A DNA stretch of 64,000 nt from Schizochytrium sp. TIO01 (GCA_004764695.1 SMSO01000033.1:868001-932000); one strand, 5' to 3'; shown: positions 3,669 through 43,600, counted from the first letter of the stretch. The notes: generated from the letters alone by a model not told the origin. Numbers and translations: made by a program.

Positions 3669-4306
3669 GGTACTGCTGCTCGGACGCAGTGGACTCCAAA
3701 AGGCACTTTTTGCTAGGAGTGTCCTATGCGCAGCTACCCATAACTGCGAGTGCTGACGATGTTTTCTCTCTTTTTTCCTCTTTTCTTTGGGAAGAAGAGC
3801 GAGCAAAACAAAACAAAACAAAACCAAACCACGTTCGTTCTTCCTTTTCTCTCCTTTTCTCTCCTTTTCAAGGATGAATAACCTTCTTCTTTCCTCTGCC
3901 TCTGTTTCTTTCCCACTGGGTTTAATCAAAAGTACGTTCTTTCACTGCAAGTTGTCGCTATCATTTTCCATTATTACTTCAATAAAATGAGCAGAGTTTA
4001 CTAAAATGAGCTTTAAAACAAAAACAAAACAACGCACCTGGGCCTATCAATCATTCCCATTCATTATTTTTTAATCTAAAGTTTTAATGTTAAAAGTTCT
4101 TTTCATTTCTTTTCAATTTTCTTTTCATTTCTTTTCATCTCATTTCATTGCTTTTCATTTCTTTTTCGTTTTAAACTAATGCATGACTCGTTTGGAATGA
4201 GAGGTCGATGTTCGAAACAGGCTTTTTCCAAACTCTTATGCAGAGGCCAAAGCTTTCATAATGCTGTATGGACTTGCTTGAAACCTGCTTACAGGCGGCC
4301 TCAGCT

Positions 4307-7252: not shown

Positions 7253-9280
7253 ATAGGGCTGAGATCGCAGAAGAAGTGGCCACCAAACAAGATTTCCTCA
7301 GCTGAGGCGGTCCTCGTGCCCACGTAGGCACCTGTAGGTGATGGTGGGGACTCTGAATAATGGCGGATTCCTCTTTCTTGGCTTTCTGATTTAGAGCAGA
7401 GGAACCTCTGTAATTGAAACGTTGCAATTTGGTAAACATACATGGTGGGCAGACGGACGCAAGGGCCGACTGACAGTATGGGTCTGTCTCCTTTTTGTGG
7501 GTGGCTCAGAGAGAGAGAGAGAAGGGGGCGTGAAAAATGAAAAAATTAAAAAGAAAAAGGGGGTTTTGCTTTATTTTGTTTGTTCATTGGTTTATAGATA
7601 AACAGTATGTAGGTGCTAGAAGAAGAAGTTTCATTCTTTAGAAAGTGGCGGTCGAAGTCTTTACTTTGTTGGTTTTGGCACGAGTGGAGGTGCTAGTGGA
7701 GAGTAAAAGGCCATACGCCATAGTGTGCTCAGGAAAGAATGCTTAAAGCCTATGAGAGCTTTGGATTCTGCAAATAAGGAAGAAGAGCGGCATGGAGAGG
7801 AAGGTTGAAGCAGCTTAGTACCAAAAGCACTTTTAAGCAACAATGACAAACCTTGAAAAGCAACGACCTGAAAGCAAAACTAAAGAGCTTTAAGCGAATA
7901 ATCGAAGCGAAGTTATAATACACTATGGCATCTACAATCACCCCGGGACACGCCTGATTCTGAAAAAGGGGTCGATCCAAACGATGGATCTACTGCAAGT
8001 CTGGTTTTAACTCGGCAGTACCTCGTCATCGGTCGAAGAAATGGCCGCTATTACAACTCCTGAGCCCCTTCTTGACTTTTTTTTTTTTTTTTTTTTAAAT
8101 AAATATTTTAATAAATATTTTATATAATATTTTTTCTAAATAATGGTTCTCAGTTTTCCGGATCAAGACAAGTTCTACTGCTTTGAATTGAAGTCTTCAC
8201 GCTTGTATACCCAAAGTTTGGCCAATACCTGGTTAATATAATGCACCTTTGGCCGTCCGATGTTCTGTGTTTAGCTAGCAACCATACCCCATCCGCCATA
8301 ACGTCTCGCACAAACGGAGGCCTCCCTTCAATTAAAGCCAAAAGTCGGAGACCGTCGCGTTCGAGCGCCTTTTATAAAAGCGCAGGTTTAACAATTCTTT
8401 GTCTACAATCTCTCGGCACTACCTAGTAAGTATTATTAATTATAGTAGATGCTAAACGAAAAGCTATATCTTCCACGAGCAAGGATACTGAGGACAACTA
8501 CCAAGTGTTTCCTCCTGCTATTACTACCTCTGCAGCGGCTTGTGTTTTCATAGTTGTTAGTTAGCGTTTACCTCCCACAAGTGCTTCCTATTGAAGGAGA
8601 CTCGTCATTTTCTTTTTTTTGCTTTTCTTTTCAGAGCTCTTAGGCATACCTAGCCATGGCTAGTCCTTTCCTTCTCAAGCTTTACTTTTTAGTTACTCTT
8701 TTAAAGGAAAAAAGGGCAAACGAAATTTCGCATGATAGGGATGAGGCCAAGCCAGCGACCCTCTGCAGCTGCTTGGAGCTTGCTTGAGACGAGCGTCAGT
8801 GCAGAGCCAATGGAGCTGATTTCTAGCCGCTGCCGTCTTCTTTTTCAAGGCGTCGCGATGCTGTTGTCTTGGCGGAGACTTGTTTGCTTACAATCGATCA
8901 TTCAGACTGCCATACAACTGACTGAAAACTTGGATTGCAGCGATGAGTACTGTTGCATATTGCTAGTTTCAAGAAATTATACTAACTCTAATTTTAAAAA
9001 CAAACAGTATAAGATCATCGAAGGCAGGACTCAGAGCGAAGAAGCACGGAGAGGCCGGGCTCGCGAGGCGACCGTTTGAAAGCAAGGCGGCTCTGAGTAT
9101 CCTTTTGCGTTTGAAGGGCCGTCTCAATTGCGGCAGGGGAGATCTTTGAAATCGAATGGCGGTAGATTCCGGCTGACCTGCAAACGAATGACAAGAAACT
9201 AACCATGGGCGATCTTGAGACACCGCGAACTGCATCCACCCATTCATTCATTCTCCATATACCAAGCCACTTTAACTATT

Positions 9281-9304: not shown

Positions 9305-10489
9305 ATATCAGAGCTCTTTCTCCCTAGCTAGGAGGTCTGTTTCTATTTAGAAAATTTAAATATATATATTCGAAATATAATTAAGATATAGGTAAGGTTT
9401 TATTAAAACATTTTTTTTTTGGGCGAGGTTAATTAAGTTTTTAATTTTTTTCCTTTTTTTTAATTTTTTTTTTTTTTTTAAAATTAATAATATAAAGTAG
9501 TTTTGGATGATCATTAAGAATTAATTAAACTAAAATAATCGTAGCAGATTGTTAAGGGGAATAAGAAAGCGCCATGCTTGATAACAGAGGACGACGACCT
9601 CGTGCGGTTCTAGAGCACATGGATTGGTCGAATCGTAAGTGAGATTATCCATTTATCCATATCAACCCTGAAATATTCGCAAGCGAGACGGAGACTTTCT
9701 TGGTACTTAGTTTACAAGTCGAGTTAATCGCCCATTTGTGGTTTGCGTAAGGCAGATTTCTGGCCAGAATCGAACAGCGCTCGTGCGCGAAGAAAGCCGG
9801 AGCTATTTTGAAGAAGGTAGATACTCAGATAGTAGTAGTATTATTTTTTATTAGTATGTTCTTTTTCGGGATTAAAGAAGACAATCCCCACGTCTTGCTT
9901 GCTCACCGTTCAAGACTAGGGCTATATTCATGTGTTGGAAATGAGATCCAATCACCCCAAAGCTGAGCAGCAAATATTCGATCGGCGCCAAGGTATCTAT
10001 TCTCTTGGCTGTGAACTTCTGACTGGACTTGTAGTTGAAGTTGAGGGATAGTTCGCAGTTGATCAAACAAATGTATGCATTCTGTGATGATGCTAAAGAT
10101 GGTCACGACTATGCTCTTTGTAAGGACTACATCCACGTTACAGCCACCCTTTTGACCAACTTTTGTCAAGTCCTGGCTACTTGCACATGAGCTCATCATT
10201 CACTGCGAGCTTTACGCAGTACTTGGTCTCAGCGCTAAATGCGTGGGCGCGCCTCATAAGCGCCACGCCGTCTGCATAATAAGAGCGCCAATTTAAAGGT
10301 AAGGAAAGGCTTTCACGTGAGCGCGACAGTAGTTTTACAATTTTGGATGTGCTCAAGAACAGTCATGGCATTTGTCGTTGTTACGAGGACAAGTATTAGC
10401 TCCAGCACATTATGGAATCGCCACGAGTTTTGCTTCTGGGGAAATGCCCATGATATGTATACCCCAGCGTCTCGAAAAGGTCTTCCAGA

Positions 10490-11743: not shown

Positions 11744-12202
11744 TCCTAGTTCAAAGGAGCAGCAGAGACTAAGACTTCGTTGTTTGTGTCCTCCCTTTCT
11801 GGTGGAGCGATTGCTCGATTGATTGATTGATTGATTAATCAGATTGATCTGCACTCGAGATATCACGAGTGACGCTGCAAGTTTTGGCCATGACGGCGCA
11901 CTGCTGAAGGGGCCAAACTCTGCGAGCTGCCGAGGAGTTGGTGATGCTTTCGTACGCCGTTGGAAACTTGTGTTTTACAGACAAAGGCAGTGATGAATAA
12001 TGGTACCTGCATTGCATTGCTACATAGCTACATACCTACCTCTGACCCGTACGAGTGGCTGGAAATGGCCGCTTTCTTCGGAGAATGAACTCAGCGAGAG
12101 CACCGCTGAGTGAAGGCATTAACTTTTCATGATAGATTGGGCAGTCGGCCGCTGAGTGGACCTGTTACAGCACCGTAGAATAGCAGGCGCTGTTTATCCG
12201 TC

Positions 12203-22600: not shown

Positions 22601-25600
22601 GCTATAGGGGTCGTGGTAGTGTAGTAATCGCCATAGCCTGTATCACCAACACCATTATAAGCCGCAACGCGGACATAGTATGTTGTGCCAGGCTCCAAAG
22701 GGTCGCATGCCAAGCCAGTGTAGGAATGAATTACCGTGGTTGCTCCAATATCATATACCCATCTCTTTGGTACATCTGTGAGAACACGAAGATTGTCATT
22801 GCCATCAATAAGCTGCTCTGTGGAACACAATGGAAGCGTTCCTTCCAGAGAAGTAAATGTGCTACTCGTGTCCCACTCAATGCGGAGCTTGATAAGCTCA
22901 ACACCTCCATCACGGTCCGGCGAAGTCGTAATAACACGAATAACCGTTCCAGAAACCATCGATACATCAACATCAAACGGAGCTAAGGGGGGTTGGTCAG
23001 CAGTTGTGATGGACTCAGGAGTTGAAGTTTGCCAGTTTGTGTTGTACCCGTAGTTCGGTGCACTCAAAGTAGGATCAACAATTTGCTGAGGCACACTGTT
23101 AATCGCAGCAACACGAACAAAATACTCTGTGGAAACACTTAAGTCTGTAACAAAAGCATGGTACGGTGGAGATCCTTGAATTGCACTCTCACCAACCTCC
23201 ACAGTTTGTGCGGTGCTAAAGTCTGACGAGGTATCATACTCGACGAGGTATCCAACAATAGTGTCACCACCATCGCTGACACCGGGTTCAAACTCTACAA
23301 GCAGAGCAGTGCTAGAGACTGCACTCAAGTATACATTTTGTGGCGCCGACGGAAGTTCCATTGGCACAACAGAGAGGACAGAGCTGTATGCAGACAGTCC
23401 CATTGAATTACGAGACTGAACACGAACATAGTACGTTGTACCAGCTTGGAGACCGGTGGCGAAATAGCATTTGTCACAACCAACATTATCACTCTCATCA
23501 TCTGCAAAGGTAAACTCTGCCCCGCCACGTACAGTCACAGAAGCAGAAGAAGGGGCTAGCGCATGGCGAGCTGCCCTGATAGGACCTGGATCCACTTGTC
23601 CTGATGCAAGATCTATCGTAATCATGTAGACAAAACCAGGCACAACACGATATGCCTGTAGACCTTCTGCATTGGATCCTTCATACCGATCAGGTACAGT
23701 GTAGTCAGAAACTGATGCCAGAGGTACTGACGTGGAATCCAGCGTTCCAGTCCGAGCCACTGAGAAAGTCTCTTCCATGATCTTAATGGTATCACCCCGT
23801 TCGAGACCAAGATCTTCAGTAGAAGAAATTTCACTTTCGGCGTTCACAACAGTTACAGTGCCAGGCAATAACTCTAAAGCAACCTCACGCTCTACATGGA
23901 CTGTATCGAGCCCAGACAAGTTTTCGAGCGCGGCCCGAACCTCATCAGCACTGGCATCAAAATTTAATGAAATGGTTTGTTCATTGCCATAGATTAATGA
24001 AAATGTACCGCTCAATTCTTCACCTTGCTGAGTTGTGGCAATCTCAACTGTGTAATCAGCGCCAGCGTCAACACTGGCAATGAGCTCTGGAACATTTCCT
24101 TGAACGGAACCACCAGAGAAAGTTATCTGATATGTCAGTCCATGGCCAATTGAACCAGAGTGCTGAATCGTGTTCACGGTAACGCCTCCCGCGCGGATGT
24201 TAGTAAGACTATCCAAGATAGATTCCATAGAAGGTGACGCCCCCATATCAATGCCTGTGTAGGATTCGTTAATATTCGGAAAAAAACACAAGGCACAATC
24301 AGAGCTTGTGTCAAATTGGAGATCGAATGTTCCGGACAAAGGGTCTTGTTCAATTGCAACAAACGGACCCGAGCCACAGCCGCTTCCACTGCATGTAAAA
24401 TCCGTAGTACAGTCTTCAGTTCCAACCGATACAAGCTCAAGCTGGTAAATATCCGATGTTTCCTGGAAAGTGACGGTATAGGTGTTACCAGTCGTTGTAT
24501 TCGAAGAAGATACTGAAACGGCAGGGTTAGTGAAACTTGAGTCGAAAGCAAGAACTGCATCTGTAATTGCAGTTGCCATCGTGCTTGCATCTGCGTCGAA
24601 GTCTAGACAAACAGTTTTCCGGTCGTTGTAAGAAAGAACATACTGTCCTCCAGTAATGACATCATTTGCTGCCACAATGATGGTCTGGACTACAGACGGT
24701 TTGTAAATGCGAACTTCCTGAATCTCATCGAGTGGAGATGCGCTAACGCGGACTTCTTGACGACGATATAAAAGCTCTGGGCTTTCAAGCATATACCATT
24801 GACCGTCACCTGAATCAAAAGATGACGAAGTATCGATCTCGACTCGGTAGCCGGTGATGTAGTCACCGCCATCATTACGCGGGGCGTCAAACGTGATTGA
24901 TGCAGATGAACCTGTTGCTTCAGAACCCTTTTGTACCTCTTGAATGAGTACAATTTTGCCTGAACCTGACAATAATGTTGCAGACCCAGTCATCAAAGCT
25001 AGATCCCCACCGTTACTTGGACTTGTAAATGTTACTAACCAAGAGCGGCCACGCTCACTGTCTGATGTTGTTTCTGTGACACTAACCGACTTGACTGTAC
25101 TCAGAGCTTCCAAAGCAGATTGGAGAGTAGAAGTATCGGCATTATAAGCAATTGCAGACGTCGTAGCATGCAGGTAACTCAGAGTAAAGCTGCCAGATAA
25201 CCAATTGCCATTCTGAACTTCACTAATCGTCACCGCGGAGCCCGATCCAGTAAGAGAGCTTGTTGCCGTCATTGCTCCAAGATTTCCAATATCCGAGGTG
25301 AAAGTTACAGACCATACATAGCTGTTAGTATCCTCATCCAACACCTCTCGGGTGACATCTACAGTATGAGTGTTGCCTCCGTCCAGGGCCTCAATAGCAG
25401 TTTTGACATCAGTTACAGACGCGCTGAACTGAAGGTTACTGGTGGTTTCGGAGTTGAAAGTCAATGTAAAGAATCCTCCAATCTCATTGCCATTTGAGAT
25501 GGTCTGAACAGTGCACGCATCTCCGTCGAAGTTAGAGGGCGTGCATGACATCATATCTAAATTACCAGCGTTTCCTTCAAAAGCTACGGTCCACAAGTAT

Positions 25601-28600
25601 CCACCGAATTCGTCAGCAATTGAACGTTGCGTATGGACACCAAAAATGTTAGGAAGTTTTTCAAGCTCTGTCTGTAATTCTGCAGCAGTCATGCTGTACG
25701 TCAGATCATCACCATATGGGTCCAAGATAGTTGCAGAAGACTCATAGGTGTTAGTAGTAGGTACCCACAACCTACACTCTGTGTTGCTGCCTGGTCCATT
25801 AACAACACTTATAGATGCCGAGGGCTCTGCAGGGTCGATAAATACGACTGTGTATGAAAAACTGGCATCAGCAGATTCAGATGACCGAACAACCTCGACA
25901 TCAGATATGCCCGAAAGGGCCTCGAGCGCGGTTTCCACTTCAGCCTCAGTTGCATCAAAACTCAAACATGTAGATGAGGTGTCCCCATCAAATTCAACTT
26001 GGAACCCTCCAACCGTAGGAAATTCACCATCACCATCAACTTGATAAAATCGAAGAACTTGTTTCTCTTGAGCAGTGGTGAAGGTATGGCTTACACCATT
26101 CACTGGACCGGTAAAGGACAATGAAAGAGTACCAGTGCTGATGGTTGTTGAGCTTGTCGTCTGAATAGTTTGAACCTCACGTAGGTCTGTACAACTTGTT
26201 GTAATTGTCTGGATTTCGTCAATGTGCGTTGCTGCAAGGGTCACTCGTTGAACTTCATCCTGGTGCAATGCGTAATCTACCGAGCGTAGGTCAGGAGCAT
26301 TAGGAATGCCTCGTGGGAACTCCACTGGGTTGTCGGTAGAAAATTCACCAAGCCCCAAACTGTTACGCAAAGCAACCCTGAATACATATGGTAAACCCGT
26401 ATCGAGGCCTGTGACAGTGTATTGATCAGGCAGGACACCCTGGATAGCTTCGAAGACAAGAACATCAGCATCAGTGCCTTGCAAGCCTGTAATTACGCTC
26501 TCCATGTTATCCAAATCTCCAAGGTTTGTCCCGAAATTTACAGTCCACCGGTGACCTGAAACCTTGTACAGGGCCAACCCAGATTTCGACCAGCCACTAT
26601 AAGTTGTTGGTGAATTAGCGTCCCCAGAAATTACTTCTCCAGTAACACGAGAAACCTCACCCAAATACAAACGATTTTCTGTGCCATCAAGGACTGTGGC
26701 GTAGTTTAATGTTAAGTCATCACCCACCAATGTACCAACATTTGGTACAAGCTGAGGCACATCACCCATCACTGAGCTACCAATGAAAGTAATGAGCCAT
26801 GTTGAACCTTCCAACGTAGAGTCCGTTGGATCTGAACGAGACACCTCTACGTTGTAGGCGCCGATGTTAGGTAATGCCCAAAGACGCTCAAGTAGTGAGC
26901 TCTCGCCATGGTCCAGGGACGGATCAATAGAGCCTGTTGTGTAACTACCCTTTACTGCGCACATGCTGCAGTCTGTAGTATTAAAAGTAACAGTCATGCC
27001 AGTCCCAAGATTTCCTGGGCTAGTGCGCGCATCCACAAGATTTGTCCAATCGCATGCATCTTGAATGATTTCGAGAGGGTAAAGGCCTGTTGTTGCATCG
27101 AAAGTTACAGTATAGGTGATTGTGGTTGAAGTCGTTGATTTGACCACACTAGTTACTGTCTGACTTGAGACTGCTTCAATATCTGCTAGAATTGTACTTT
27201 CGTCAGAGGTCCAATCCAGACAAGAACTACTAGTGCTACTGCTGTATTGAAGTTTATAGGTGGCAGTTGTTGTTAAATCAGTTGTATCAGCAACTTGCAA
27301 GGTAAAAGACTGCGTTATCAAGTCATCTACAACAACAATCTGCTGGATTTCTTTACGTAGTGGACCCGCAAGGGATGAGTCGCCCTCTACCAGAGTGGAC
27401 GCTTCGAGATACTCATCCGGGCTAAAGGACGTGCAGCCAGTAGTTGTGATCTCAAGCTGTTCCTGATCGCCTATAAAATCCACCCCATCAAAGTAAATAC
27501 TGTAAACATAACCTGCGCTGGGGGAAGCGACACTGGCTACGCGACGCGTCACTTTAACACCTTCTGAGACACCATAAAGGTCTAAAATGGCCGCTTCCAC
27601 ATCGGCTTCACTGGAATCAAAGTTGAGACAGCTAGTTCCACTTGTATAAGTAGACGAGTAGATTTTAAATGTACCAGCTGTGATTGTATCAGAACCAGAA
27701 GCACTAGTTGCAGTAAGAACTTGAACTTCAATACCTTCATTCAGAACAGTAAATACAGGTGGTACCAAATAAATATTCGCCTCAGAGTTTGTTTCACCGG
27801 TAAAGACTCGATCTAAAGTTAATGTGTTCGCTGTGCCACCCTGTTGCACCTCTGATATTGCGAAACTACCTGCGCTGAGGGATGTGCATAATGCTGTGGT
27901 GCTGCCGTCTTCGAGATCCGTGACATCTCCATCAAAGTTATCTCCAACGAAAAAGATTGAGTACAAGTAGCCCGTGCTGGCAACATATTCGCGAGTCACG
28001 ATCACATCATCAATTCCATCCAAAAGCTCTAGAGCACTCTCAAGTTCTTCTGCGGTCGCATCAAATGGCAGGCAAGTAGACGTCTCGTCAAGATACTGCA
28101 GAGCGAATTCGCCTGACGCAGGTTCTCCTGAGAAAGCTACAGACTCAACTTCCACACCAGTGCTGATGATTTGGTAGACGCCATTGTCGATGCGAACATA
28201 GTCGTCCTCCGCAATGATCGAACGGAGGTTCGAGCTAGTTGTGACCGTAGCAGAGCCAACAGTCATCTGCCCGGTAGCAGAGGCTATCAAAACATCCCCA
28301 GTGATGCCAATATCGTTATCTCCATTGGTTCCGAGACCAGTTGCACCACCAACACGAATCAGATCTCCTCGGGAAATATAGGAATAAATGTCGGCAGTGA
28401 CATCCAAAAATCTCGAACCCATCTCAACAGAAGCCGTCCCTGGAAGAGGCTCCATGAAGGCGAGCGATCGTTGGGTTGTGACGGTTCCAATACTATCAAT
28501 GAGTTCGAGTTGAGTCTTCAAATCTACAGCACTAATGTCGTATGAAAGTGCATCGGTGGTTTGCCCGTCGTAGCTAAGCCTGAAATAACCGGAAAGCGGA

Positions 28601-31600
28601 GTGCTACCAGACACGGTTTCACCAACTGAAACACTAGCTCCAGTTCCAGTGAGGTCTGTGTCGGTCCAGGAAAGAGCAGAGATGTCCCCAGAACCAGGAG
28701 GCCAGGTTTCTCCTTCAAATACGCCAGGATTCCGAAGATAAGAGATCCTCCAAATGTAGCCGCCGACATCTCCATCTGTGGTAGCCACGGCTCCCCAACC
28801 ACCAGTAGAAGCATTAGGATATACGTCTCGCACGACGCGGACATCGACAAGTTCATCAATCTCCCGAAGTTTTCGTGCCACCTCTTCAGGGTCTTCATCA
28901 AAACTAATAGTCCGCACAATATCAGAGGTATCCTCCAACACAAGAGTAAATTCACCACCAAGGCTTACAGATCCAGCCTCGTCTTCATTCACTGCAAATG
29001 AACGGGTGGATCCTGAATCAGTCTCAAACATGAATGTCGTATCTAGAGTGATAGTGTCCATGTTTCCAGCTCCCGGGGGAGTCTGATTTGGGTTCTCTGT
29101 AAAACGGATCGTCCAATAGCGAGCTCCGTATTTGTTCACTCTAGCCGACTCTACATCAACACTCTTCACAGCACTTAACGCTTCAAGCGCTGCATCAACT
29201 TCATCACTTGTAGCATCCCAAGAAAGCGGTACAGTAGCTTCTCCGCCTAGACTCATCGTAAAAGTGCCTCGGAGAATGTTACCCTTTACTTGTTCTGAGA
29301 CGGCCATAGTCGTACCTGTACCAATCAGATTTCCATAATTTGGAACAAGTTCTGGAACATCACCAGCGCTCAGACAAAGCTCATCTGCGGCGCAAACATC
29401 TCGCAAAAATGTAACAGACCATGTGTATGATCCTGCTTGACCAGACCCCGAATGATGAGCATCGACGGCGTCACGCGTGACCGTAACGTCCCCAATATTG
29501 CTCATAGCTTCCAAGATTTCTTCAATGCTTTCACCGTATCGATTGCTTGATGCCGCTGCAGCCGCGGAAGGTGGCGCATTGTGAGCAATCGAGCCAGAGG
29601 TTATGGATGCCCTGTTATACATAAAATCTGATGTGGTAGAGTCCAACGTTAAAGTGAAATAGCCTGCGAGTGGCAAACTTCCAGCCTCGTACTCGGCAAC
29701 ATCGCAAGTCACCGACTGCCCACTAACCTTGGCTTGAAGACCAGAGGTCACGCATCCAACATTGGAAATATCTCCGACGTTCATGCCCCAAGCTTTGGAA
29801 AAGCCGGAGTCCCAATTGTCATTTCCATGATCAGTGCCATCATGCACAGCACCATTCGTAAATGTAACAGTCCAAACGTAACTTTCCGTCTGTGACATTG
29901 TTCCTGATTGACTGCGATAGACACTGACTGTGCCAATATCTGAATGTGATTCGAGGGCCGATTTAAGTTGAGCCGCTGTGACATCATGTGCAAGAGGAGC
30001 AGTATTCTCACCCATGTACTGGATCATGAAGTTGCCATCAATTTCATTACCGTTCGTATCTGTTGAAATCGATATTGCTGCACCCTCTCCAGTGAGTTCA
30101 CTACATGAGCCAGTGTCAGCCCAGACCATTTCTTGATTGCATGTATTTCCAGTTGTATCACACACAAAGCTTGCACAGCCAGTTGTATCAATTCCAAATG
30201 AGTACGACGGATACTCAGGGTCAACAAAGCTCACAACATACGTGTGACCGTAATTTGAACTTGAACTTGTCACATCCCCTGAACGCTCAACGAAAATATC
30301 GATACTAAATGCAGTTGACAAAGTGCTTTCGAACAGAGTTTGAGAAAGATCCCAACTCAGACAGCTTGTCTCTAGACCGTTGTAGGTTATCTTAAACTTT
30401 CCAGTTTGAACAGCGCCATCTGCTGCGGTTGTTAATGTTTGGACACTTTGGCAAGTATCAGGAACGTCAAGCTCAGGTACATCACCACCAACACCGCTAC
30501 CCACAAAAGTAATTGTGTAGCTGGAGCCACTGGCAGGGCCCAAAGCACTGCGAGTTACAGTGACATCATCAATATTGCTTAAACCCTCCAGGGCAGCCTC
30601 CAGGCCTCCTGCGGTAATGTCAGCGCTTAAAAAGTCAGTCTCGTCAGTTGTAAGACCGTCTTTCGAAGTAAACGAAAGCTTGAACTGACCGCCAACTTCG
30701 TTTCCTACACGAAGGGTATCAGCCACAGCAGCGACAGAGCTTGAACCGGAAACTTCGCTCAACCCAGTCGTGGATTCGATTTCAAGCTGCTTGACATCAG
30801 AGCGAAGAGTTGTGTATTCAATTGTCCAAGTGTAGCCGCCAGTCCAGCTATTGCTGTCAGCAGCAGGCACGTACTGTTCACGTGTTACAGCTAGTGTTCC
30901 CATGCCACTCCATGTACTTTCAAGTTTAGACTTCAACGAGGTTTCAGACTCATCCCAATCAACTGAAACACTTGTCGAACCATCGTCCCAGGTAACTGCA
31001 AAATTACCGCTGATAAAGTTTCCATCAGTTGTTGAAGAAACCGAACAAGTGATTCCAGTACCGGGCGAAGTTCCATAAGTGGTATCGTCAACACGAATAT
31101 CAGCAGCAACAAAATTTGCGCATGATAAGTCTGGCATATCACCAGAGTTTCCTTGGAATGTAATTGTATATTGCACGCCTCCGACACCATCATTCAGTGA
31201 TGTCTTAAGTACCGCTACGGGCGCGTAGATATTAGACATGCTCTCAAGTTTTTCTTTGATAGAGGTTCCTGCACCACTGGTCTCATCAGGTGCGTCGACC
31301 TGAATGCTTGCAGAAGTAACCTCCCCAAAGCCTGTTGAAACTGAAGCGGATGAATCATCGTAAGCTAATGAGTAGGTTCCAGAGTGGTCGATTTCATTAC
31401 CTTCGACAGTAGTCGATGGATGCGTAGGAAGACTCGGTGCATCGCCTGTTAGAGATACTGTAGTGACCGTAAGTACTGTGGCAGGGAGGTTACCAGTTAC
31501 ACCCGATCCTGAGAATGAAATACTCCACGTTTTACCCTCACCATCAGCACCTTCATGTTTGGTTTCAACGACTGTCACATCCATATTTGTGAGTGCGTTG

Positions 31601-34600
31601 AGTTTTGACTCAAGGTCACCGTCGATAGTAACGTCAATTGTTGCACTTGTTTTGGTAGACTTTTCAGTGCAAAGATAACATGCTGTTGTATCTGCGACCA
31701 GTTTAAAAGAACCTGCCAAATTTGTGCTTGTTACAGATACTGGATTTGTTGGGTTACAAGCCGAACCTCCGCAAGTGAATGAAGTTCCACATGTACCATA
31801 CACGGAGAGGTCCTCAGGGTTAGAGGGAGAAGTAAATGTAACTGAATAATCTGCGGCGCTAGCTGTGAGCGTGTCTTGTACAACATTCACAGCAAGGCTA
31901 TTACTACTGGCATCGAGAAGGTTCTCAATGGCCGATTTGACAGAGAGGTTGTCTGAACCAGTTGCATCTGCATCCCATGGAATACAACGTGTCAGACGAG
32001 GGGTGGTGTATGAACCGTACTCTAGTTGGTACCCAGAGTGAATTCCCTCAGTATCTGTAGAAATCGAAATGGTAGGGGAATCGCCGGTCAGTGAATTGGT
32101 AACCACCACTAGCTCCGGTACATCACCTCTCACATTTGATCCAGAGAAAGTAATCGTAAAAATGTAACCCTCACCGTCAGACTGTGCAGTGCGGGAAACT
32201 TGAAGATTTCCGCTTCCAATGTTTGACAGAAGTTCAAGTTGTGTTTTGATATCAGTCAAACTCAATGGATCAATAGCGGCCGTTGTTTGAGACGAGAGCT
32301 CGTTACATAAATCACATCCTGATGATGTGTCAAATTGCAACGTGAAAGTACCATCAAGGTTGGTACTGTCCAAAACAACTTGCTCAGACGTGCATTCTGC
32401 GCTTCCGCAGTAGAATGTGTCACACGTTCCGTCAGTGACAACAGACAGAGCATTCGGCTCGGTAGGTGATGAAAAGACAATCGACATATCATAGTCTTGA
32501 TTTGCAGAATTTATTGTCATGGAGGTAGTAACATCAACTCCAGTGAGTGCATCTAGTTTTTCCTCAAGCGAGGATGCCGTTTCGTCGAACCGAATGCAGC
32601 GTGATGTTTCAGAACCATACATAAGCTGGAATGCACCATGATTTCCTTGTGTAGGAGTACTTAAAGTGATAGTACCCGCGTTTGTTAGACTACTAGAATA
32701 AGTCATCGTAGGCACGTTGCCGTAATATGCCGGAAAAGTGACATCCACGATATAACTAGTACTTGTAGTACTTCCCGTGATAGAAACAGAAACAGACGGG
32801 TCATTGGTAAAGAGTGATAGTGCATTGAAAGCATTTTGAACTGTACTTGCATCGTCAGATGTCACATCAACGGTTACAGATGCATCTGATGTACTATCGA
32901 GAAGATGTTCGCCGCTACTCGCTGGGATAGTCAGCGTAAAAGTACCTGAGAGGGTACCACTTACTGGGATAGTAATTTTTTGGTGCTCAGCAGTCGAGTC
33001 AAATGCAGATGCAGCCGTCACTGAGACAACCTGGGTGCTTCGTGGTTCCTTGACTTGAATAATTTGAACTTCAGACTCCCAGTCAATATCCGCATCTGCA
33101 GCGACATTGATGGTTTGTGTAGTCCTCATCTCTGTAAGAACGAGTTCTTGAACCTCATCAACATCAGTACCAGTAATCGTCAAAACTTGAATCTCATCAA
33201 TATGATCAGCAGATGTAACTAGAGTTTGTAACTCGTTGATATCATCCGCAAAGATTGAAACGATCTGCTCCTCGTCTACGTCGGGCGTTGAAGTGGTAAT
33301 AGTTTGAATCTCTGGTGTTACACCGTCGCAGTCTGTGGAGATGACTTGTACTTCATTTACTCCGACGACGCTACTGGTTACAGTTTGACGTTCATTGGTC
33401 ACTTGAACTGTGGCAATGATTTCCTGAACCTCGTTCGTCACAGCTGCAAAGGTAGCTAAGACCTGAGTTTCATGTAGAATAGGGACCGTAGCGCTACCGA
33501 GACTCTGTGTTGTTGTTGTGATTGTGGCACTACCTCCCGCAAACGATGTACATGGCGATTGGTCTTCTGCCAGAACAAGTTCATAAATAGGATCAACAGG
33601 GTTTCGAAAACGTACTTGCCATGTGCGCCCATACGAAGAAGGCTGTTCAGTGAGAATGACGCTTACATCCGTGATACCAGTGAATTGAGTTTCCAAAGCC
33701 GCCTCCATCTCTGCAGCAGTTGCTTGAAATGACACACATGATGACATTGTTTCCGCTCCAAATCCAAGCAAGAAGGTTCCTGCAGTAAGAGTAGCATCTG
33801 CAGAAAGCACCACAGATTGCAGAGAGTCAAAATCTGCACTTGGGTCCCACTCAACCTCAAGAGACTCGAGAGATCGTCCTCCATCGCTATAGGGAAGATC
33901 CCAAGTCAATGTGATGGAGGTATCCGATGCGACAGTGGCTTGAACATTGGTGGGCTTGGGTGGAACCTGATCAGCTGGAATCGCTGTAGCCGGTGTTGTA
34001 ACAATCGGTGGTCCATAACCAAGAGAGTTCATAGCAGTGACACGAGCGGAATAGTTTGTGCCTTCTAGAAGTGGGGAGTCCTCTGCACCAGTGAGGATAT
34101 TACGGCTCCCAATAAGGTACTCATAAGTTGAACCACTCACCATTGCGTATTTTGCTGCTGGTGGCTGTGTAAAATCTGTGTCCCATTCGACCAAATATGC
34201 GGTAATCGGGCTTCCACCATCGCCACCGTAAACGGCTAAGTCTGGATTCGGTGCAGTCCACTCCACCAAGAGTTGGACACCACTAACAACTGTAAGTGTG
34301 GCAGTCTCAGGCGCACTGGGCAATCTCAGGCGTGGAGAGGCCGAAGATGGCGCACTACTTTTGAAAGGGCCTGAACCACGGCGATTGATTGCACGGACGC
34401 GAACGTAATATGCATGAGTAGTTGTCAAGTCAATGTTGTAAAAGTAGGGCGAGCTGAGATCAACTGTAACTGGGAAGTTGACAAAATAATTGCTTGTTGC
34501 GATGTTGCCAAAGTTAACATCGTAGTCCCACTCAATGCGGTAAGATTGAATATCAAGACCACCATTGTCGGTGGGGGGTGTCCAGACCACCTTGATCTGT

Positions 34601-37600: not shown

Positions 37601-40600
37601 GTTGCATGACGAGTCACCTCTTCACCATCTACCCAAAAAGTCTCACCAGCAGCAATCACATCACAGAGACTCTCTTGTGTAATCACGCTGGTTTCTCCAT
37701 TTAAGACAGAAGCCTTGGCTGAGACCTTGCGTCGCGAAACTGTTCTCTGGACTTGCACACGACCCAGAGAATTCATCACCTCGAGTGCGATCTCCATCTC
37801 AGATGCGCTAACATCATACGGAAGAATTGTTGTTGAGTCAGAACCAAGCTGCAAAGTAAATGACCCATCAATGTTATCCTTATCAGCACTCGATTCAACA
37901 ACAACACGCCGATAAACTTGAGCATAGGAGTCTAGTCCTTCCAGTTGTTCCGAGTGAGCAACGAGAGATTCTTGCGCTCCTGCACTCTCTGGAAATGTAA
38001 TGTGCCATTGAATGAAGGTGTCAGAACCAGAAGTGAGATCAACCTTCTCTACAGAGATTGGAGCAATCTCTGTAATGAGCTCTACAGCTGATGCAACCGT
38101 TTCTGCATCTGCAGAGGTATCCACTTCCACATATGATCCATTACGAGCAAGGATCATGAAACCATCAACGGGATTTTCGTTTGCCTGCAGAACCAATACC
38201 TGAACGTCTTTTGTACCCTTGTAGCAGCTTCCCTGATAGCTTCCATCGAGCCACTTCTCGCAATCGTTTGCCAAAGCTTCCATATAGATGTAATCTGTAG
38301 GAAGCTCACCATCGTATTCAGTGCTCACAGAAGTTGTAATTGTACCTCCATAGGATGTCAAGCCAGAACCATCGATTGTAAGTTCAGGAAGGTCACCAAG
38401 ATCGCTGGAAAAAACAATATTCCATGTCGTTCCATAATCTACCTCAGCACCTGTGACACTCACTCCACGAATGGAAGGGAGCTCATTCAGAGCAATTTCA
38501 ACGTCAGCTTCAGAAGCGTCGTGAGCCAGAGGGCGTGTTGTCTCAGTACCAAACGTAAGTGTGAATGTGCCAAACAAGTTATCAACACTGCTAGAAACTG
38601 TGATATTCTGCATTTCTGAAACAACAGTTGAAACAGGAAATGCCTCAACTATGTAGCGATCCACAAATGCCTCTCCGGATTCTTCTGATGGAGCACTCCA
38701 TGAAACAGACAGCTGCGAAGCGGAATATGGCTGTACAGTAAGCGATGCTGGCGCTGCAAGTCGGGCTTCCGCATATAGCGCTAAGGGCACGGTACCAGGA
38801 GCCCCAATCATTGGTGCTGCAGAGCAGTCCGCAGAAGTGGGTGCTGTGGTTGGGCAGATTGTTGGGGATCCTCGAGTTGGCATTTGTGCAACGGTAGAGT
38901 ATGGGCCAAGGCCTGCCTCGTTACGTACTGCAACGCGAGCGTGAACATAATCACCTTTAGAATACTCTCCATGTGTTCCAATCGAGACGGGGCCAATAGG
39001 CATAACTCCAGGTGTGGTTTCAGAAGCTAGAACTGATCCACCCAGTGCAAGAGAATCATCAATATCAAGTAAGGGTAAGTCTCCGATGTTCGTGGCAAAG
39101 GTCACCGACCACGCAAATGTACCCATCACACTATTATCGAGATTCACTTCAACACGGCCAACGGTAGTCAAAGTCTCGAGCCAGAACTTTAAGTCCTCAG
39201 CTGAAACATCAACTGCAACTGTAATGGGGCTGCCAGATTCATCAAAATCAACAGTAAAGTACCCACTGGTTGCAGTAGAAGTGATGACCTGAACTTCAGA
39301 CGTGGTGGACGCATCAGTTAACGTGGAAGCGAGGGTTGTAAATTCAGGCGCAACACCAGCTCGCAGCGTAGAGATAGTCAAGCTTGGATCCAGAGTTGCG
39401 GCAAGGCTAGAATGCACAGCAAGACAACCTGAAGCTTCTGCTCCAAGACTATCACATGTTGCCTCTCCATAAAGAGATGTCATGGTGACTTGCCAAACAT
39501 AACCACCTTGTGAGTCAGGACCACGACGAGAGACCTCAACAGAACCGATTCCGGGGAGATCCTCCAAAGCATGCTTCATTTCCTCTGCAGTAGCACTGTA
39601 GGAAAGTGCCGCAGATCGCTTACGAATATAAGCTGTCAGTGAAGTGTCGGTTTCTCCTGTATAGGCCTCTGTCAAAGTGATGGAGGTGCTGTCAATAGAA
39701 GCAACTTCACTCTCATGAGAACCGAGCCGAATAAAGTCTCCTTGTTCAACGGAGCTTTGCCAGTCGCTACTGGTAGTTGCGCCATAGGCACCACCAGAAA
39801 TACTTACTTCTCCAAGAACCGTGTCCATAATATAGCCAGTGGCTCCAGAAGCCCCCGCACGGTGCAACTCGGCCAATGTAATAGTAGACGAATCAAATGT
39901 TACTCCTTGCTCTGCAACTCGGTGGACTTCTCCGCTAATTAAAATGTAGTCACCTCGGTTAATTTCGCCAGTCCAATCCTCAGTTGTGCTTCCAACACGT
40001 GACTTTTGAGGGATTGTTACAGTGCCCGGTAAAGCTGTTGTGAATTCGCCTACAAAATCAAAAGACATAGTAAAGGTTCCAGAAAGGGGGCCAGTTGATG
40101 CACTTGACTGAATCTCGAAAACATGAGGCACAAACCCAGCAACACCTTCCACTTCAGTTCCAATGGAAATCGAAATGGCAGTTGATGCAGGGGCTTGGCA
40201 TGAGCCAGAGCCAACATCGGTGGAAGTCAACGAGCCTACGTTTCCATTACACATGTGAGAACCTGTAAATGTAATGAGAAAACAGCTAGCGCATGCCGCA
40301 CTATTCAGGGAAACTGATACGCCATCAACAGAACCGAGACTATTGAGTGCTAGCGAGAGATCCTCAACGGACGAGTCAAGGCTCAAACAATCGGTGGACT
40401 CACCATCAAATGTGAGCTTGAAGGATGCTGATGGCTCTGATTCTGCTCCTGTAATATTGATTGCTTGGATCTCCATGATACGTGTGGCGTACTCAATCTG
40501 GACACTGCTTACGCGGGCTCCATTGTTACCATATACAGTGGTATCCACAGGCAGCTCATAGTCAACTAGAAGGGCTCCGTCGGATGCAAAGTTACGACGA

Positions 40601-43600
40601 AGGCTCACAGCACCTGGGCGATCCGGGAGAGCATATGTTCTTAACGGAGATCCTGATGCTATCTGAACTCTTCCATTACCTTGAGCATTTACACCATAAG
40701 CGCGATAGTAATAGAAACGTCCAGGAGTCAAGTCATATACAGGGATTGTAATAGGATAGCTAGTTCCAGCAGATACAGATGTCGAAACTTGGATGAGATC
40801 ACCGCTATTGAAAGAGTCAATGGTATCCACCTCAATAATAAACGATGAGATCTGCGAGCCACCTGAGCTAATGGGCGAATTCAAAGATAGCATGACAGAG
40901 CTTTCGGACTGAATAGCAACATTAACGTCGCGTGGCGGAAACGGAATATTAACAGCTGGGGTCAATGAGGCAGGCAAGGGGGCGGCAAAGCCACCAGTTC
41001 CACGAAGAGCATTATAAGCCGCTACCCGAACAAAATACTGGCGTTTGGTCAACCCAGAAATACGATAGCTGTATGGCATCATGCCCATTACACCGGCTCG
41101 GGCTTCTTCGACACTAAGAATACCAGATGATGGGACACCTGCAGCGTCGACGTCAAGACGTGAGCCAACACTACCAGGGTAGAGAATGTCAACAAACGTA
41201 ATCTCCCATGAAAAACCGCCATCAACTTCCAGGACATTGCGCTTTACGTTGACTTCGCCAATCGTGATAAGAGATTCTAAGGCGTTCTTGATCTCGGCAG
41301 CGGAAGCATCTACAAAAACAGGGTCGGTTGTCTGCCCATCAAAAATCATTTGAAATGTCCCGGTTGAAGTGCCAGTGCAGGTGATACGACGTACTTCATA
41401 CACTTGTGCCACAGAAGTGCTCTGTACCACAGCAGACCCAAGCAAACTGGAGTCAAATGATGCGCTTACGTCCCATTCGAGCTCGTAGTGTGTAACTGGG
41501 GAGCCTCCGCTCTCCAGAGGAGCAAGCCACTCCACTAAAATCTCAGTGTTCGAGATCGATTTCATCGTCGGGTATCGAACCTTGGGAGGAGCAAGCTTAA
41601 TCGGAGATACTGATGTGGGCACTGTAAATTCCGGTGTTGAATAGCCAAGCTGGTTACCAGCGGCGACACGTCCATAATATGGAACACCGCTTAAAAGGCC
41701 GGTGAATTCTGCAACTCCGACAGCCTTCACGGATACCTTTGCGTCATTGCTTAAAGCTGACAATGTATTCTCATAGATTGCAACAAGTTTACGCGGGGCC
41801 GAAGAAGCGACGCTTGTAAACGTAATCCCCCATTCATAACCGTTATCAATTGAGACTCGTGAAACATCGACAGTACCAATCAGGCCTAAGCTTTCAAGTG
41901 CAGACTTCACACTGGATGCACTTGCATCTTTTGCAAGAGCAGGCGTTCTGGCAAGTCGGTAGCACGGAACATGGGAATAGGTAACGCCATCATGAGTAGC
42001 TGACTTGCTTGCATCTTCTGCGTCAGCTAGAGGAACTGAGTAAGTTCCCCAGCTGTCGCTCAAATGCACACGGTATATAGGTCCGCTCAAGATATCCCCA
42101 ATTCTGATGTAGTCACCTTCAAGGATAGTGGGAGGAGCAAAATTAGTGTTCGAGGTAGTAGCCCCTGAGTTGAGTTCGTAGATTCCAGAGATTCCAGAAT
42201 CGCCAGGTGCAATCGAACAACTGCCAACTGCAGAGTCAAGTTGAAAGACGGGTGTTCCAATCGCAACTGTTTCTCCATCGTAGGTTGTGGCTATACTTGC
42301 ATCATCAATAGTGGCGAGCGGCAAACTTGTTGGACTCAACGTATCAGTGAGGTGGACGCGGTATGTACGACCCATAATTCGGATAAAATCACCGCGAGCT
42401 ACACAATAATCGAAACCGGACGCTGAACCCGACACCCAAGTCAGAGCATAATCTCCTTGTGAAACACTAACTAAGGCATCTCCGCATAAACGTTGAGTAA
42501 ATGAACCGTAATCATTGAAGGAACCATACGCAAGGTAAAAGGTGCCAGAGATACCAGCAGTGTAGGCACTAGTCCGAACGCGTTGAATGGTGTAATCTAT
42601 AGGAAGAATCTGCGTCTGTAAAGAAGAAGAGCTGAATGCAGCACTACGATCAAGTTCAACCTTGAATGAGGTTACAGGCTCCCCACCATGCTCATCAGGT
42701 TCTTCAAATGTAATTTTGACTTGTTGATCATTGATTACTTTCATCTCAATGGTTTTGAGTGCGGTTGGAACACTTTTGGGAGAAAGAGAGATAGGGGTTG
42801 ACGCACTGAGAGGACCACGGCCACGATCAGTTTGCGCGGCTACTTGAACATAGTAGTCCTCTCCAAGATCCAGGCCTTCGATAGTGTAGGTGGAGGTAGG
42901 GGCGGTCACTGTAGCTGACCGGTAGGCTAACGGCTCGACACCGACCTGAGTATCATCCTCAATGGTGACTACAGGACTGGTACCTCCAAGCAAATTATCG
43001 TTGTATGTGAGTGCAGGTTGTTCCCCACGCTGAGACTCAAAAGTAATCACCCATTCGTAACCATATGATCCATAGCTTGACCTTGTGACAGTCACATCCC
43101 CAATGGTTGGCAAAACCTCAAGTGCGGCTTCCACACGCAAAGCACTAGCATCGTAAGCAATATTAGTTGTAGTGTATTTGTGGAAAATCTCATGCGATCC
43201 AGTGGCTCCAGTAAAGGCAGACTCAAGAGGCAGTCGCGAAGCGCTGAAAATGTCCCCCCCGCTGACACTCACAGTGTACTCTACCTCATTAATAACTACA
43301 ACATCACCGCGAGCTAGATACCGAGTCAAGTCCAAATCTCCTTCAACCGTTGCAAAGAGTGCTCCATTAGACACATAAACAGTGCCGAGAGATACATCAT
43401 ATGCTGAACCAAACGAGAGTGTGAAAGACCCGGACATTACGCTTGAAGCCGTTGTACGGACTGTTTGTACGGCTTTGGTTCCAAAATGGGGTGTGGATGC
43501 AGATCGCTGAAACCACTCCACAAAATATCTGTCGACTGTGATACCCGAAGCAAGGACTGGTGCGGACCAGGATACCTGCAAAGAGCTTCCTGAACCCGTG

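What the first reader, a model, noticed from the sequence alone, without database searches (positions are those of the whole stretch)
26437..33474. 13-deep recursive 'Russian-doll' arm: 13 orphan head strands followed by exactly 13 headless domain bodies
SEEN: the normal module is head (EVQxIxx) + body (G.F.L.F...ALE.L...V.V.R...W.VTF...Gd.p.L...L.G...v.....G). At 33474-~32960 thirteen heads of ~11-17 aa occur back to back: HETQ, NEVQ, NERQ, NEVQ, PEIQ, DEEQ, NELQ, DEIQ, DEVQ, RTTQ, SEVQ, RSTQ, AEHQ. Thirteen bodies with no head of their own follow: SGTFTL ~32950, HGAFQL 32640, DGTFTL 32355, HSGYQL 32040, AGSFKL 31716, SGTYSL 31383, SGNFAV 31011, GGQFKL 30693, DGNFMI 30039, AGYFTL 29667, RGTFTM 29271, GGEFTL 28959, SGYFRL 28593. 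Other modules inside this span carry their own heads. INFERENCE: each module is inserted right after the first strand of the previous one, so the chain runs out along 13 strands and folds back through 13 bodies. That would give a rod in which neighbouring domains are joined by two covalent linkers. KNOWN: nested insertion of a few domains occurs in T4 gp18 tail sheath and in flagellins. I am not aware of a 13-level homotypic case, but I cannot search the literature.
Basis: partly seen in the sequence, partly recalled or inferred. Interest (0 to 1): 0.95.

Follow-up and report, generated by a model that had tools for sequence, protein, structure and literature searches.

The report
Thirteen-deep nested domain arm in giant protein
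A secreted protist protein of about 16,250 residues carries a side arm in which one small phage-type domain appears to be inserted into itself 13 times, about twice the deepest nesting I found described (six levels), though whether each orphan strand really completes its matching domain is not yet shown.

Summary
On the minus strand, 13 short EVQxI "head" strands (window 33474-32950) are followed by exactly 13 headless domain bodies, plus one complete sibling module, ending at 26437.

The module is not new. It is homologous to the mycobacteriophage Bxb1 "CTE" decoration domain (gp23, E 4.6e-43; fold Z 9-10). By sequence order, gp23 itself looks like a three-level nest.

Support for one-to-one, last-in-first-out pairing:
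- Counts stay equal across versions of this arm: 13/13 here and in a 52%-identical transcript orthologue, 10/10 in P0034, 9/9 in P0018.
- The 9-deep homologues lack one contiguous central block of four heads plus four bodies.
- Counts are equal in 55 of 136 multi-head segments of homologues (12.9 expected by shuffling).
- Head-to-head similarity mirrors body-to-body similarity only under the exact mirror pairing (r 0.41, P 0.0009).
- Heads are conserved slightly better than bodies, with no indels.

AlphaFold is split. One model puts head 11 in the domain of body 3. The other fills that slot with the preceding tail strand. Head confidence is low in both.

Verdict: a real, conserved, record-depth recursive insertion. 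The exact strand pairing is still inferred (about 0.68).

The scan's first readers noted the same architecture elsewhere in this gene.

The parts
32950..33474 (-). Run of 13 head strands H1-H13 (aa 10138-10312): xEVQxIxxx, 11-17 aa each. H13 is directly contiguous with body 1.
   Evidence: All 13 Gln residues are conserved and there is no indel against orthologue P0001, with 58% identity.
30448..32949 (-). Headless bodies B1-B8 (aa 10313-11146). LTG-type and Cys-rich tails alternate.
   Evidence: Body HMM hits; sequences.
30097..30459 (-). Sibling module with its own head (QSVQTL), body and Cys-rich tail. It sits between the body of B8 and the LTG tail that follows it (that tail is window 30040-30096).
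   Evidence: The same arrangement is present in P0001. It is absent in 9-deep P0018.
28594..30039 (-). Headless bodies B9-B12 (aa 11283-11764).
28456..28593 (-). N-half of body B13 (strand 1, helix, strand 2; aa 11765-11810).
   Evidence: The HMM hit covers profile positions 2-43 only.
26602..28455 (-). About 620-aa insert inside B13. It holds an SH3-like 'RGDxIxV' domain that is itself split by module aa 11924, then module aa 12070 and the two-level nest aa 12208/12298.
   Evidence: Read by eye against similar inserts at aa 6818 and 7935-8082. Not folded.
26437..26601 (-). C-half of body B13 (strand 3, GDL loop, tail; aa 12429-12483). It closes the outermost level.
   Evidence: HMM hit to profile positions 48-68 at aa 12429-12463.
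33475..33825 (-). Ordinary head+body+tail module (aa about 10021-10137) just before the arm, inside the same host FN3 insert.
31717..33126 (-). Central block H10-H13 + B1-B4 (aa 10254-10723). It is present here and in P0001. The long 9-deep homologues show no collinear match to it, and their alignment resumes at B4-end/B5.
   Evidence: Collinear blastp chains; head-run alignments.

Best explanation
**What it is.** The span encodes one side arm of a secreted, intronless protein of about 16,250 residues. The arm is built by recursive insertion of a roughly 100-residue alpha/beta module into itself. The module is homologous to the mycobacteriophage capsid/tail 'CTE' decoration domain.

**Module layout.** A normal module is head strand (EVQxI), then body (GxFxL strand, helix, VxVxR strand, YxWxVTF strand, GDxPxL), then tail strand (LTGxxxVxVxE).

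**How the arm is wired.** In the arm, each next module is inserted in the loop between the head and the first body strand of the previous module.
- The chain runs outward through 13 heads.
- It turns at the innermost complete module (H13+B1).
- It returns through 13 bodies, so head k belongs to body 14-k.
- Both chain ends therefore leave the arm at its base, inside a loop of a split FN3 domain.
- The result would be a branch of 13 modules plus one sibling, with two short covalent links between neighbours.

**Shown here:**
- the counts, and their conservation in versions of the arm of different depth;
- the central balanced indel;
- the mirror-specific similarity;
- homology to the phage domain;
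- the signal peptide.

**Inferred:**
- that each head physically fills the first-strand slot of its mirror body;
- the rod shape;
- any mechanical or adhesive role.
For: 1. **Counts.** There are 13 heads and 13 headless bodies plus one headed sibling. Orthologue P0001, an MMETSP transcript, has the same architecture and is 52% identical over the arm.
2. **Homologous arms of other depth keep the balance.** P0018 has 9 heads and 9 bodies. P0034 has 10 and 10.
3. **Central balanced indel.** In the long 9-deep homologues the collinear alignment resumes at our B4-end/B5. Head-run fragments align with H1-H9 and then run into their first body. The difference is therefore one contiguous block, H10-H13 + B1-B4.
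4. **Same ORF, other places.** Balanced nests occur at eight other places (five 2+2, one HHBHBB, one 3+3, one 4+4). Across 150 homologues, 55 of 136 complete multi-head segments have equal counts, against a shuffled mean of 12.9 and a maximum of 26 in 5000 shuffles.
5. **Mirror similarity.** The head-similarity matrix correlates with the body-similarity matrix under the exact mirror mapping (r 0.41, P 0.00085). It does not under same-order mapping (r 0.14, P 0.13) or any shifted mapping (at most 0.29). The P0034 arm repeats this: mirror 0.48 (P 0.012), same-order 0.16.
6. **Head conservation.** Heads are 58% identical to P0001 with no gaps and all 13 Gln kept; bodies are 51%. Per-element identity of H_k tracks B_(14-k), r about 0.58 by my own arithmetic on the numbers.
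7. **AlphaFold model 1.** Single solved CTE domains superpose on model residues 76-82 to 420-427, which is H11 plus B3, skipping about 230 residues. Examples are Bxb1 gp19 (Z 9.8, rmsd 2.3-2.8 A, 88-89 residues) and the Bxb1 capsid protein (Z 9.1). In model 2, two weak rows span 80-287, which may be H12 plus B2.
8. **Unambiguous nesting in the same fold.** B13 is split after strand 2. One level of the 4-deep nest appears, by eye, to be split after strand 1. In solved Bxb1 gp23, three N-halves are followed by C-halves.
9. **Secretion.** A signal peptide starts the ORF.
Against: - AlphaFold does not settle the pairing. Heads H5-H12 have pLDDT 45-60 in both models. There is no confidence step between heads with and without a partner body in the construct.
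- In model 2 the solved CTE domains align to residues 294-411. That puts the tail of B2, not H11, in the first-strand slot of B3. B8 likewise uses the tail of B7.
- The tail-to-body spacing in nests equals the head-to-body spacing in normal modules (read by eye), so a tail could substitute for a head.
- Equal counts and mirrored similarity could come from the history of insertions alone, without present-day contact.
- The alignments given to AlphaFold were shallow and partly misaligned.
- 81 of the 136 segments were not balanced in the automatic parse. Many are cut at long inserts or have missed elements, but I did not check them one by one.
- No coordinates or contact maps were available to me.
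Confidence: 0.68

Rival explanations
1. The recursion is historical only. Modules were repeatedly inserted between head and body, but each headless body now uses the tail strand just before it as its first strand. The 12 displaced heads form a separate beta structure or spacer alongside the arm.
For: - AlphaFold model 2 aligns solved CTE domains to tail+B3 (residues 294-411) and tail+B8 (844-954).
- Tail-to-body spacing equals head-to-body spacing (read by eye).
- Heads have low pLDDT and show no partner-dependent step.
Against: - Heads are the best conserved part of the arm and have no indels.
- Counts stay equal in versions 9, 10 and 13 deep, whereas relics should be lost unevenly.
- The tail motif is equally present in lone modules, where no body follows it, so it has a role in its own module.
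- The EVQ motif is shared with phage modules in which the head is contiguous with the body. That argues for a role inside the fold.
- Model 1 places H11 with B3.
Confidence: 0.22
2. Same-order (first-in-first-out) pairing: head k completes body k. This would give a strand-swapped closed ring of 13 domains rather than a hairpin rod.
For: Equal counts alone would also fit this. I have no direct evidence for it.
Against: - H13 is joined to B1 by the same short loop as in any normal module, so they pair.
- The similarity correlation is weak for same-order mapping (r 0.14, P 0.13) against 0.41 for mirror mapping.
- The indel between the 9-deep and 13-deep versions removes the last heads and the first bodies.
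- Model 1 pairs H11 with B3, not with B11.
Confidence: 0.03
3. Assembly artefact or non-coding repeat: the head run is not part of a real protein, or is removed by splicing.
For: None found. I did not check RNA reads for this genome.
Against: - The frame is open for 16,277 codons, with a signal peptide at its start.
- A transcript-derived orthologue, 52% identical over the arm, contains the same 13 heads and bodies as one continuous sequence.
- 344 representative proteins match at E<=0.001.
Confidence: 0.01

Closest known systems
Mycobacteriophage Bxb1 CTE domains: the C-terminal extensions of capsid gp14 and tail tube gp19, and the CTE-like domains of the 'tail tip cage' gp23 (PDB 9d9w, 9d93)
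   Same: - Same domain family by sequence: a profile of 24 modules hits gp23 at E 4.6e-43, the capsid protein at 8e-6 and gp19 at 3e-3.
- Same family by fold: Z 9.1-9.8, rmsd 2.3-2.8 A over 88-89 residues.
- gp23 keeps the EVQ head motif.
- gp23 shows three N-halves followed by C-halves, which reads as a three-level nest of the same module.
- PHROGs families of major tail proteins and a tail sheath also match.
   Different: - The phage domains are single, or at most three deep. They decorate virions, and their function is unknown (PMC8704799: non-essential, immunodominant).
- In gp23 the insertion point is after strand 2.
- Here the host is a secreted eukaryotic giant protein with more than 70 copies. 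The main insertion point is after the head strand, and the depth is 13.
- I inferred the nesting in gp23 from sequence order only. I could not read the Bxb1 structure paper or the coordinates.
SI3 insertion of the cyanobacterial RNA polymerase beta' subunit (recursive insertion of sandwich-barrel hybrid motifs)
   Same: Homotypic recursive insertion of the form A1-B1-C-B2-A2. A survey of 2.7 million classified domains presents it as its example of extreme nesting, at six levels (PMC13114784).
   Different: - Different fold, intracellular enzyme, six levels.
- Here there are 13 homotypic levels, 14 counting the host FN3.
- Here nesting is used as a general building rule along the whole protein and across a family of homologues.
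Flagellar cap FliD, flagellin outer domains and phage tail sheath domains
   Same: - Classic proteins in which outer domains are inserted into inner ones, so the chain goes out and comes back (general knowledge).
- Their domains give weak structural matches to the module (Z 5-6).
   Different: - Only two to four levels, with heterotypic domains.
- The structural scores are in the range the tool calls common arrangements, so homology is not shown.

Membership tests
Mycobacteriophage CTE-like decoration domain (Bxb1 gp14/gp19/gp23 type) | Significant sequence-profile similarity to the solved phage domains | tested here: met
   Profile A6 against PDB sequences: gp23 E 4.6e-43 (5 stretches), capsid protein 8.4e-6, tail tube gp19 3.1e-3. 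PHROGs major tail protein and tail sheath families match at E 1e-5 to 7e-9.
Mycobacteriophage CTE-like decoration domain (Bxb1 gp14/gp19/gp23 type) | Same fold as the solved domain | tested here: met
   AlphaFold models against PDB: 9d93 gp19 Z 9.8, 9d9w capsid Z 9.1-9.4, Patience gp22 Z 8.3-8.4, rmsd 2.3-2.8 A over 85-89 residues. These stand clearly above the next rows, at Z under 6.
Mycobacteriophage CTE-like decoration domain (Bxb1 gp14/gp19/gp23 type) | Sits as an extension of a virion structural protein | tested here: not met
   Here it is repeated more than 70 times in a secreted cellular protein with FN3, PA14-like and filamin-like parts. This is homology of the domain, not of the protein.
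Recursive (nested) domain insertion architecture | A domain's sequence is interrupted by another complete domain (A1-B-A2) | tested here: met
   B13 has profile positions 2-43 at aa 11765-11810 and 48-68 at aa 12429-12463, with complete modules in between. The host FN3 halves flank the arm (read by eye).
Recursive (nested) domain insertion architecture | For the 13 head/body levels: the separated pieces (head k, body 14-k) fold into one domain | tested here: inconclusive
   Model 1 places H11 with B3. Model 2 places the B2 tail there instead. Indirect support comes from counts, the central indel, the mirror correlation and head conservation.
Fibronectin type III domain (host of the arm and C-terminal repeats) | Pfam PF00041 match above the gathering score | tested here: met
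   Six stretches, E 2.2e-73, in the C-terminal 2272 aa. The split FN3 that hosts the arm was read by eye only.
Any Pfam or NCBIfam family, for the module itself | Match to a curated model | tested here: not met
   No Pfam family in the 2346-aa span. No NCBIfam family for four modules.

The most novel reading that the evidence does not exclude
A linear polypeptide encodes a branched, tree-like protein through a bracket grammar. Every head is an opening bracket and every body a closing one. Nests become side branches and siblings become forks. On this reading, this arm is a 14-level branch (FN3 host plus 13 modules) in which each head physically completes its mirror body. It would be by far the deepest recursive domain insertion known. 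The building block is a domain shared with phage virion decoration domains, and it has been kept across protist lineages at depths of 9, 10 and 13.
Probability: 0.6. Interest if true: 0.88.

Novelty: new variant of a known kind. Interest (0 to 1): 0.8.

Why it matters
- **Depth.** Recursive domain insertion is treated as rare and shallow. The only large survey I found presents six levels as its example of extreme nesting (PMC13114784). A conserved 13-level homotypic case would more than double that.
- **Folding.** A chain must fold 13 domains whose first strands lie up to about 2,300 residues from the rest of the domain. That is a hard test for ideas on co-translational folding, and for structure predictors. 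AlphaFold gave two different answers here.
- **A natural series.** Versions 9, 10 and 13 deep exist, which gives a ready comparison for folding and force-spectroscopy work.
- **Evolution.** A nest cannot be deepened by simple tandem duplication, so another DNA mechanism is needed.
- **Origin.** It links an uncharacterised phage decoration domain to giant secreted proteins of marine protists.
- **Design.** It suggests a principle for branched or doubly linked protein rods.

Tried and rejected
- **Pfam and NCBIfam on the module:** nothing.
- **The search for homologous proteins with the 592-aa inner segment:** nothing. The tool only sees proteins of similar length.
- **The look-up of encoding contigs:** I could not cut orthologous sub-ranges out of long homologues.
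- **Alignments for AlphaFold.** MAFFT repeatedly placed body fragments on the head-run columns, or scattered a long orthologue over the query. Alignments A1-A4 were discarded. A5 and A7 were used despite some noisy rows.
- **Partner-dependent confidence test.** I planned to show that heads without a partner body in the construct have lower pLDDT than partnered ones. It gave no contrast.
- **Mirror-similarity test on 4- to 5-deep arms:** no statistical power.
- **Paralogues.** The own genome holds no second gene with this module.
- **The Bxb1 structure paper** (PMC12124961) is not held.
- **Not run.** Complex prediction (heads offered in trans) would not separate the two main readings. The look-up of sequencing runs and read laying were not run because the transcript orthologue already shows a continuous mRNA.
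- **Rejected readings:** same-order ring pairing and assembly artefact (see the rival explanations).
Full report
**1. What is there**

The window is G000:C32:868001-932000 of a 64-Mb, 37-contig genome.

One open frame on the minus strand runs from window 19618 past the window's end. In the genome it is open for 16,277 codons, and it is the only gene there with this module. Upstream of the window the frame starts with MLMFILKVLAAFSLANLGVKA/QSAQ, a typical signal peptide. An FN3 beginning and four heads follow directly. From that Met the product is about 16,250 residues by my arithmetic.

A homologue cluster contains Mucochytrium quahogii, a thraustochytrid. The genome is therefore probably from a labyrinthulomycete or a relative. 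That is an inference.

**2.

A 70-position body HMM, built iteratively from the ORF, finds 73 bodies. Gaps between them are 18-51 aa, which hold only the tail motif LTGxxxVxVxExxxGxxPL or a Cys-rich variant. Ordinary neighbours have about 49 aa, which is tail plus head.

One module inside the run (aa 11161) has its own head. A head scoring matrix finds 68 heads in the ORF against 3 in a shuffled copy.

Body 13 is only half present at aa 11765-11810. Its second half is at aa 12429-12483. About 620 residues lie between the halves and contain further modules.

**3. What the module is**

Pfam and NCBIfam have no model for it.

A profile of 24 ordinary modules (A6) hits these solved proteins:

| Solved protein | E-value |
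|---|---|
| Bxb1 "tail tip cage" gp23 | 4.6e-43 |
| Bxb1 major capsid protein, C-terminal part | 8.4e-6 |
| Bxb1 tail tube gp19, C-terminal part | 3.1e-3 |

These parts are the "C-terminal extensions" (CTE). They are dispensable, immunodominant and of unknown function (PMC8704799). [quoted passage not shown]

PHROGs families of major tail proteins and a tail sheath also match.

The AlphaFold models of arm modules superpose on the solved CTE domains at Z 8.3-9.8 and rmsd 2.3-2.8 A over 85-89 residues. That is well above all other rows.

In gp23 the profile matches three N-halves in a row (residues 268-325, 328-388, 387-463). C-halves follow (514-567, 561-601). By sequence order this is a three-level nest of the same module, with the insertion point after strand 2. 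I could not inspect the coordinates or read the paper.

**4. Is there a one-to-one, mirror-order correspondence?**

(a) *Same ORF.* Balanced nests occur at eight other places: five 2+2, one HHBHBB, one 3+3 and one 4+4.

(b) *Orthologue.* P0001 is a transcript-derived protein. It is 52% identical over the arm in a global alignment, and 38% over the 1194-aa search query. It has the same 13 heads, 13 headless bodies and sibling.

(c) *Depth variants of the same arm.*
- P0018 has 9 heads and 9 bodies, with no sibling. P0034 has 10 and 10.
- In the long 9-deep homologues the collinear alignment resumes at our B4-end/B5. Their head runs align with our H1-H9 and then pass straight into the first body.
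- The difference is therefore one contiguous, balanced block: H10-H13 + B1-B4.
- A nest model predicts exactly this. A module, or a small nest, has been dropped into the head-body loop of the module H9/B5.

(d) *Family-wide.*
- I tokenised 150 homologues automatically. Of 136 complete segments with two or more consecutive heads, 55 have equal head and body counts. The shuffled mean is 12.9 and the maximum is 26 in 5000 shuffles.
- The equal-count classes are 2/2 (20), 3/3 (7), 4/4 (13), 5/5 (7), 6/6 (6), 8/8 (1) and 15/15 (1).
- Many unbalanced segments are arms cut at long inserts, or have missed elements. I did not check each one.

(e) *Mirror similarity.*
- Within the arm, head-to-head similarity correlates with body-to-body similarity under the exact mapping k to 14-k: r 0.41, with 0.085% of 20,000 permutations reaching it.
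- It does not under same-order mapping (r 0.14) or any cyclic shift (at most 0.29).
- The signal includes the pairs H10~H12 with B4~B2. The B3~B5 and H9/H11 similarities fit a duplicated two-module cassette, as another first-reader note proposed.
- The P0034 arm repeats the result: 0.48 against 0.16.

(f) *Conservation.*
- Against P0001 the head run is 58% identical, with no gap and all 13 Gln kept. Bodies are 51%.
- Inner elements evolve faster than outer ones on both sides. The correlation between H_k and B_(14-k) identity is about 0.58 by my own arithmetic on the numbers.

**5. Structure prediction**

No coordinates are returned, so I used two readouts: per-residue confidence, and the model ranges that solved single domains align to.

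*Model 1* covers H5-H13 + B1-B5 (644 aa, alignment A5).
- Mean pLDDT is 64.5. H13+B1 score 80-92, B3 scores 75-93, and B4-B5 are poor.
- All heads are predicted as strands, but at pLDDT 45-60.
- There is no difference between heads with and without a partner body in the construct.
- Solved CTE domains of about 90 residues align to model residues 76-82 through 420-427 with 85-89 aligned positions. That range is H11 (81-91) plus B3 (321-427), skipping H12, H13, B1 and B2. More than 15 rows agree. Other rows cover 106-228, which is H13+B1.

*Model 2* covers H6-H13 + B1-B8 (957 aa, alignment A7).
- Mean pLDDT is 63.4.
- The same solved domains align to 294-411. That is the tail of B2 plus B3. B8 is matched together with the tail of B7 (844-954).
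- Two weak rows span 80-287, which may be H12+B2.

AlphaFold therefore offers two occupants for the first-strand slot: the mirror head, or the adjacent tail. It is confident about neither. The alignments were shallow and partly noisy.

**6. Weighing the two readings**

The rival reading is that tails substitute for heads and the heads are relics or a separate structure. It fits model 2 and the equal spacing.

Four points count against it.
- Displaced heads are the best conserved, indel-free part of the arm.
- Their number tracks the number of headless bodies through depths 9, 10 and 13.
- The tail motif is just as conserved in lone modules with no following body.
- The EVQ motif is shared with phage modules in which the head is contiguous with the body.

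Nesting of this fold is unambiguous where the split falls after strand 2 (B13, gp23).

I put the physical nest at about 0.68 and the rival at about 0.22.

**7. How it most likely works (inferred)**

Head and tail are the N- and C-terminal strands of the module, so they probably lie side by side. That makes the module insertable.

Insertion into the head-to-strand-1 loop returns the chain to where it left. Repeating this would give a hairpin rod with these properties:
- Neighbouring domains are tied by two short linkers: head to head, and tail to body.
- The tip is H13+B1.
- The base is in an FN3 loop.
- The arm is a side branch that carries no load when the backbone is pulled.
- If the host FN3 opened, the arm would be unzipped from the outside in.

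The role is probably surface display or adhesion, by analogy with virion decoration domains. That is a guess.

**8. Comparison and novelty**

Recursive insertion is known. A survey of 2.7 million classified domains gives six levels in cyanobacterial RNA polymerase as its example of extreme nesting (PMC13114784). The domain family is known structurally from phages.

New here:
- the depth, at 13 homotypic levels (14 with the FN3 host);
- the systematic use of a bracket grammar along a 16,000-residue secreted protein and its homologues;
- the natural series of depths;
- the occurrence of a phage decoration domain in protist giant proteins.

I rate it a new variant of a known kind.

How a nest is deepened at the DNA level is unexplained. 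A tandem duplication gives siblings, not depth.

**9. Limits**

- Complex prediction and the read-mapping tools were not used.

Noticed in passing
L008:4576 downward (minus strand), i.e. G000:C32 about 936376: The giant ORF starts with a typical signal peptide (MLMFILKVLAAFSLANLGVKA/QSAQ). An FN3 beginning follows and is at once interrupted by four EVQ heads. From this Met the product is about 16,250 aa.
   Followed up: partly
window 24916-26253 (aa 12545-12990): In the four-level nest, one level seems to be split after strand 1 rather than after the head. 'TGTLSLSFTG' follows head 3, and the matching body at aa 12724 starts only at profile position 15. Insertion points therefore vary: after the head, after strand 1, or after strand 2.
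   Followed up: partly
window about 43200-43430, 39640-40080 and 27860-28455 (aa 6818-6894, 7935-8081, 11811-11923): SH3-like 'RGDxIxI/V ... tLtL..ytGe' inserts sit inside module bodies. The one in B13 appears to be split in turn by a complete module (aa 11924). Read by eye only. Not folded or searched.
   Followed up: no
window 31384-33159 (H9-H12, B2-B5): Two alternating module subtypes form a duplicated two-module cassette. One subtype has a 17-aa head with a Cys-rich-tail body. The other has an 11-aa head with a body carrying a CxLC loop and an LTG tail. The pairs are H10~H12 with B4~B2, and H9/H11 with B5~B3.
   Followed up: yes
PDB 9d93 chain Ma (Bxb1 gp23), residues 268-601: Three N-halves of the module are followed by C-halves. 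This solved phage protein looks like a three-level nest of the same domain. I could not check whether its authors describe it that way.
   Followed up: partly
window ORF aa about 1250-1330 and 3780-3900; aa about 3010-3140: PA14-like stretches (GxxADYFDNQWLSGTP...VDFxWG) and filamin-type repeats (GSPFxxxVxPg) lie between module groups. Many FN3 domains are split by module inserts. Seen by eye.
   Followed up: no
PDB 9ufe chains EA and FA ('OCM5', 'OCM6'): Weak profile matches of the module (E 0.011 and 0.17) to proteins I could not identify. They may be another solved relative.
   Followed up: no
P0002, P0015 and others: Other giant homologues of 6,000-7,600 aa, from metagenome contigs, use the same grammar in different ways. 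P0002 has a 13-14-head run. P0015 is mostly tandem HB with many small nests. Their organisms are unknown.
   Followed up: no
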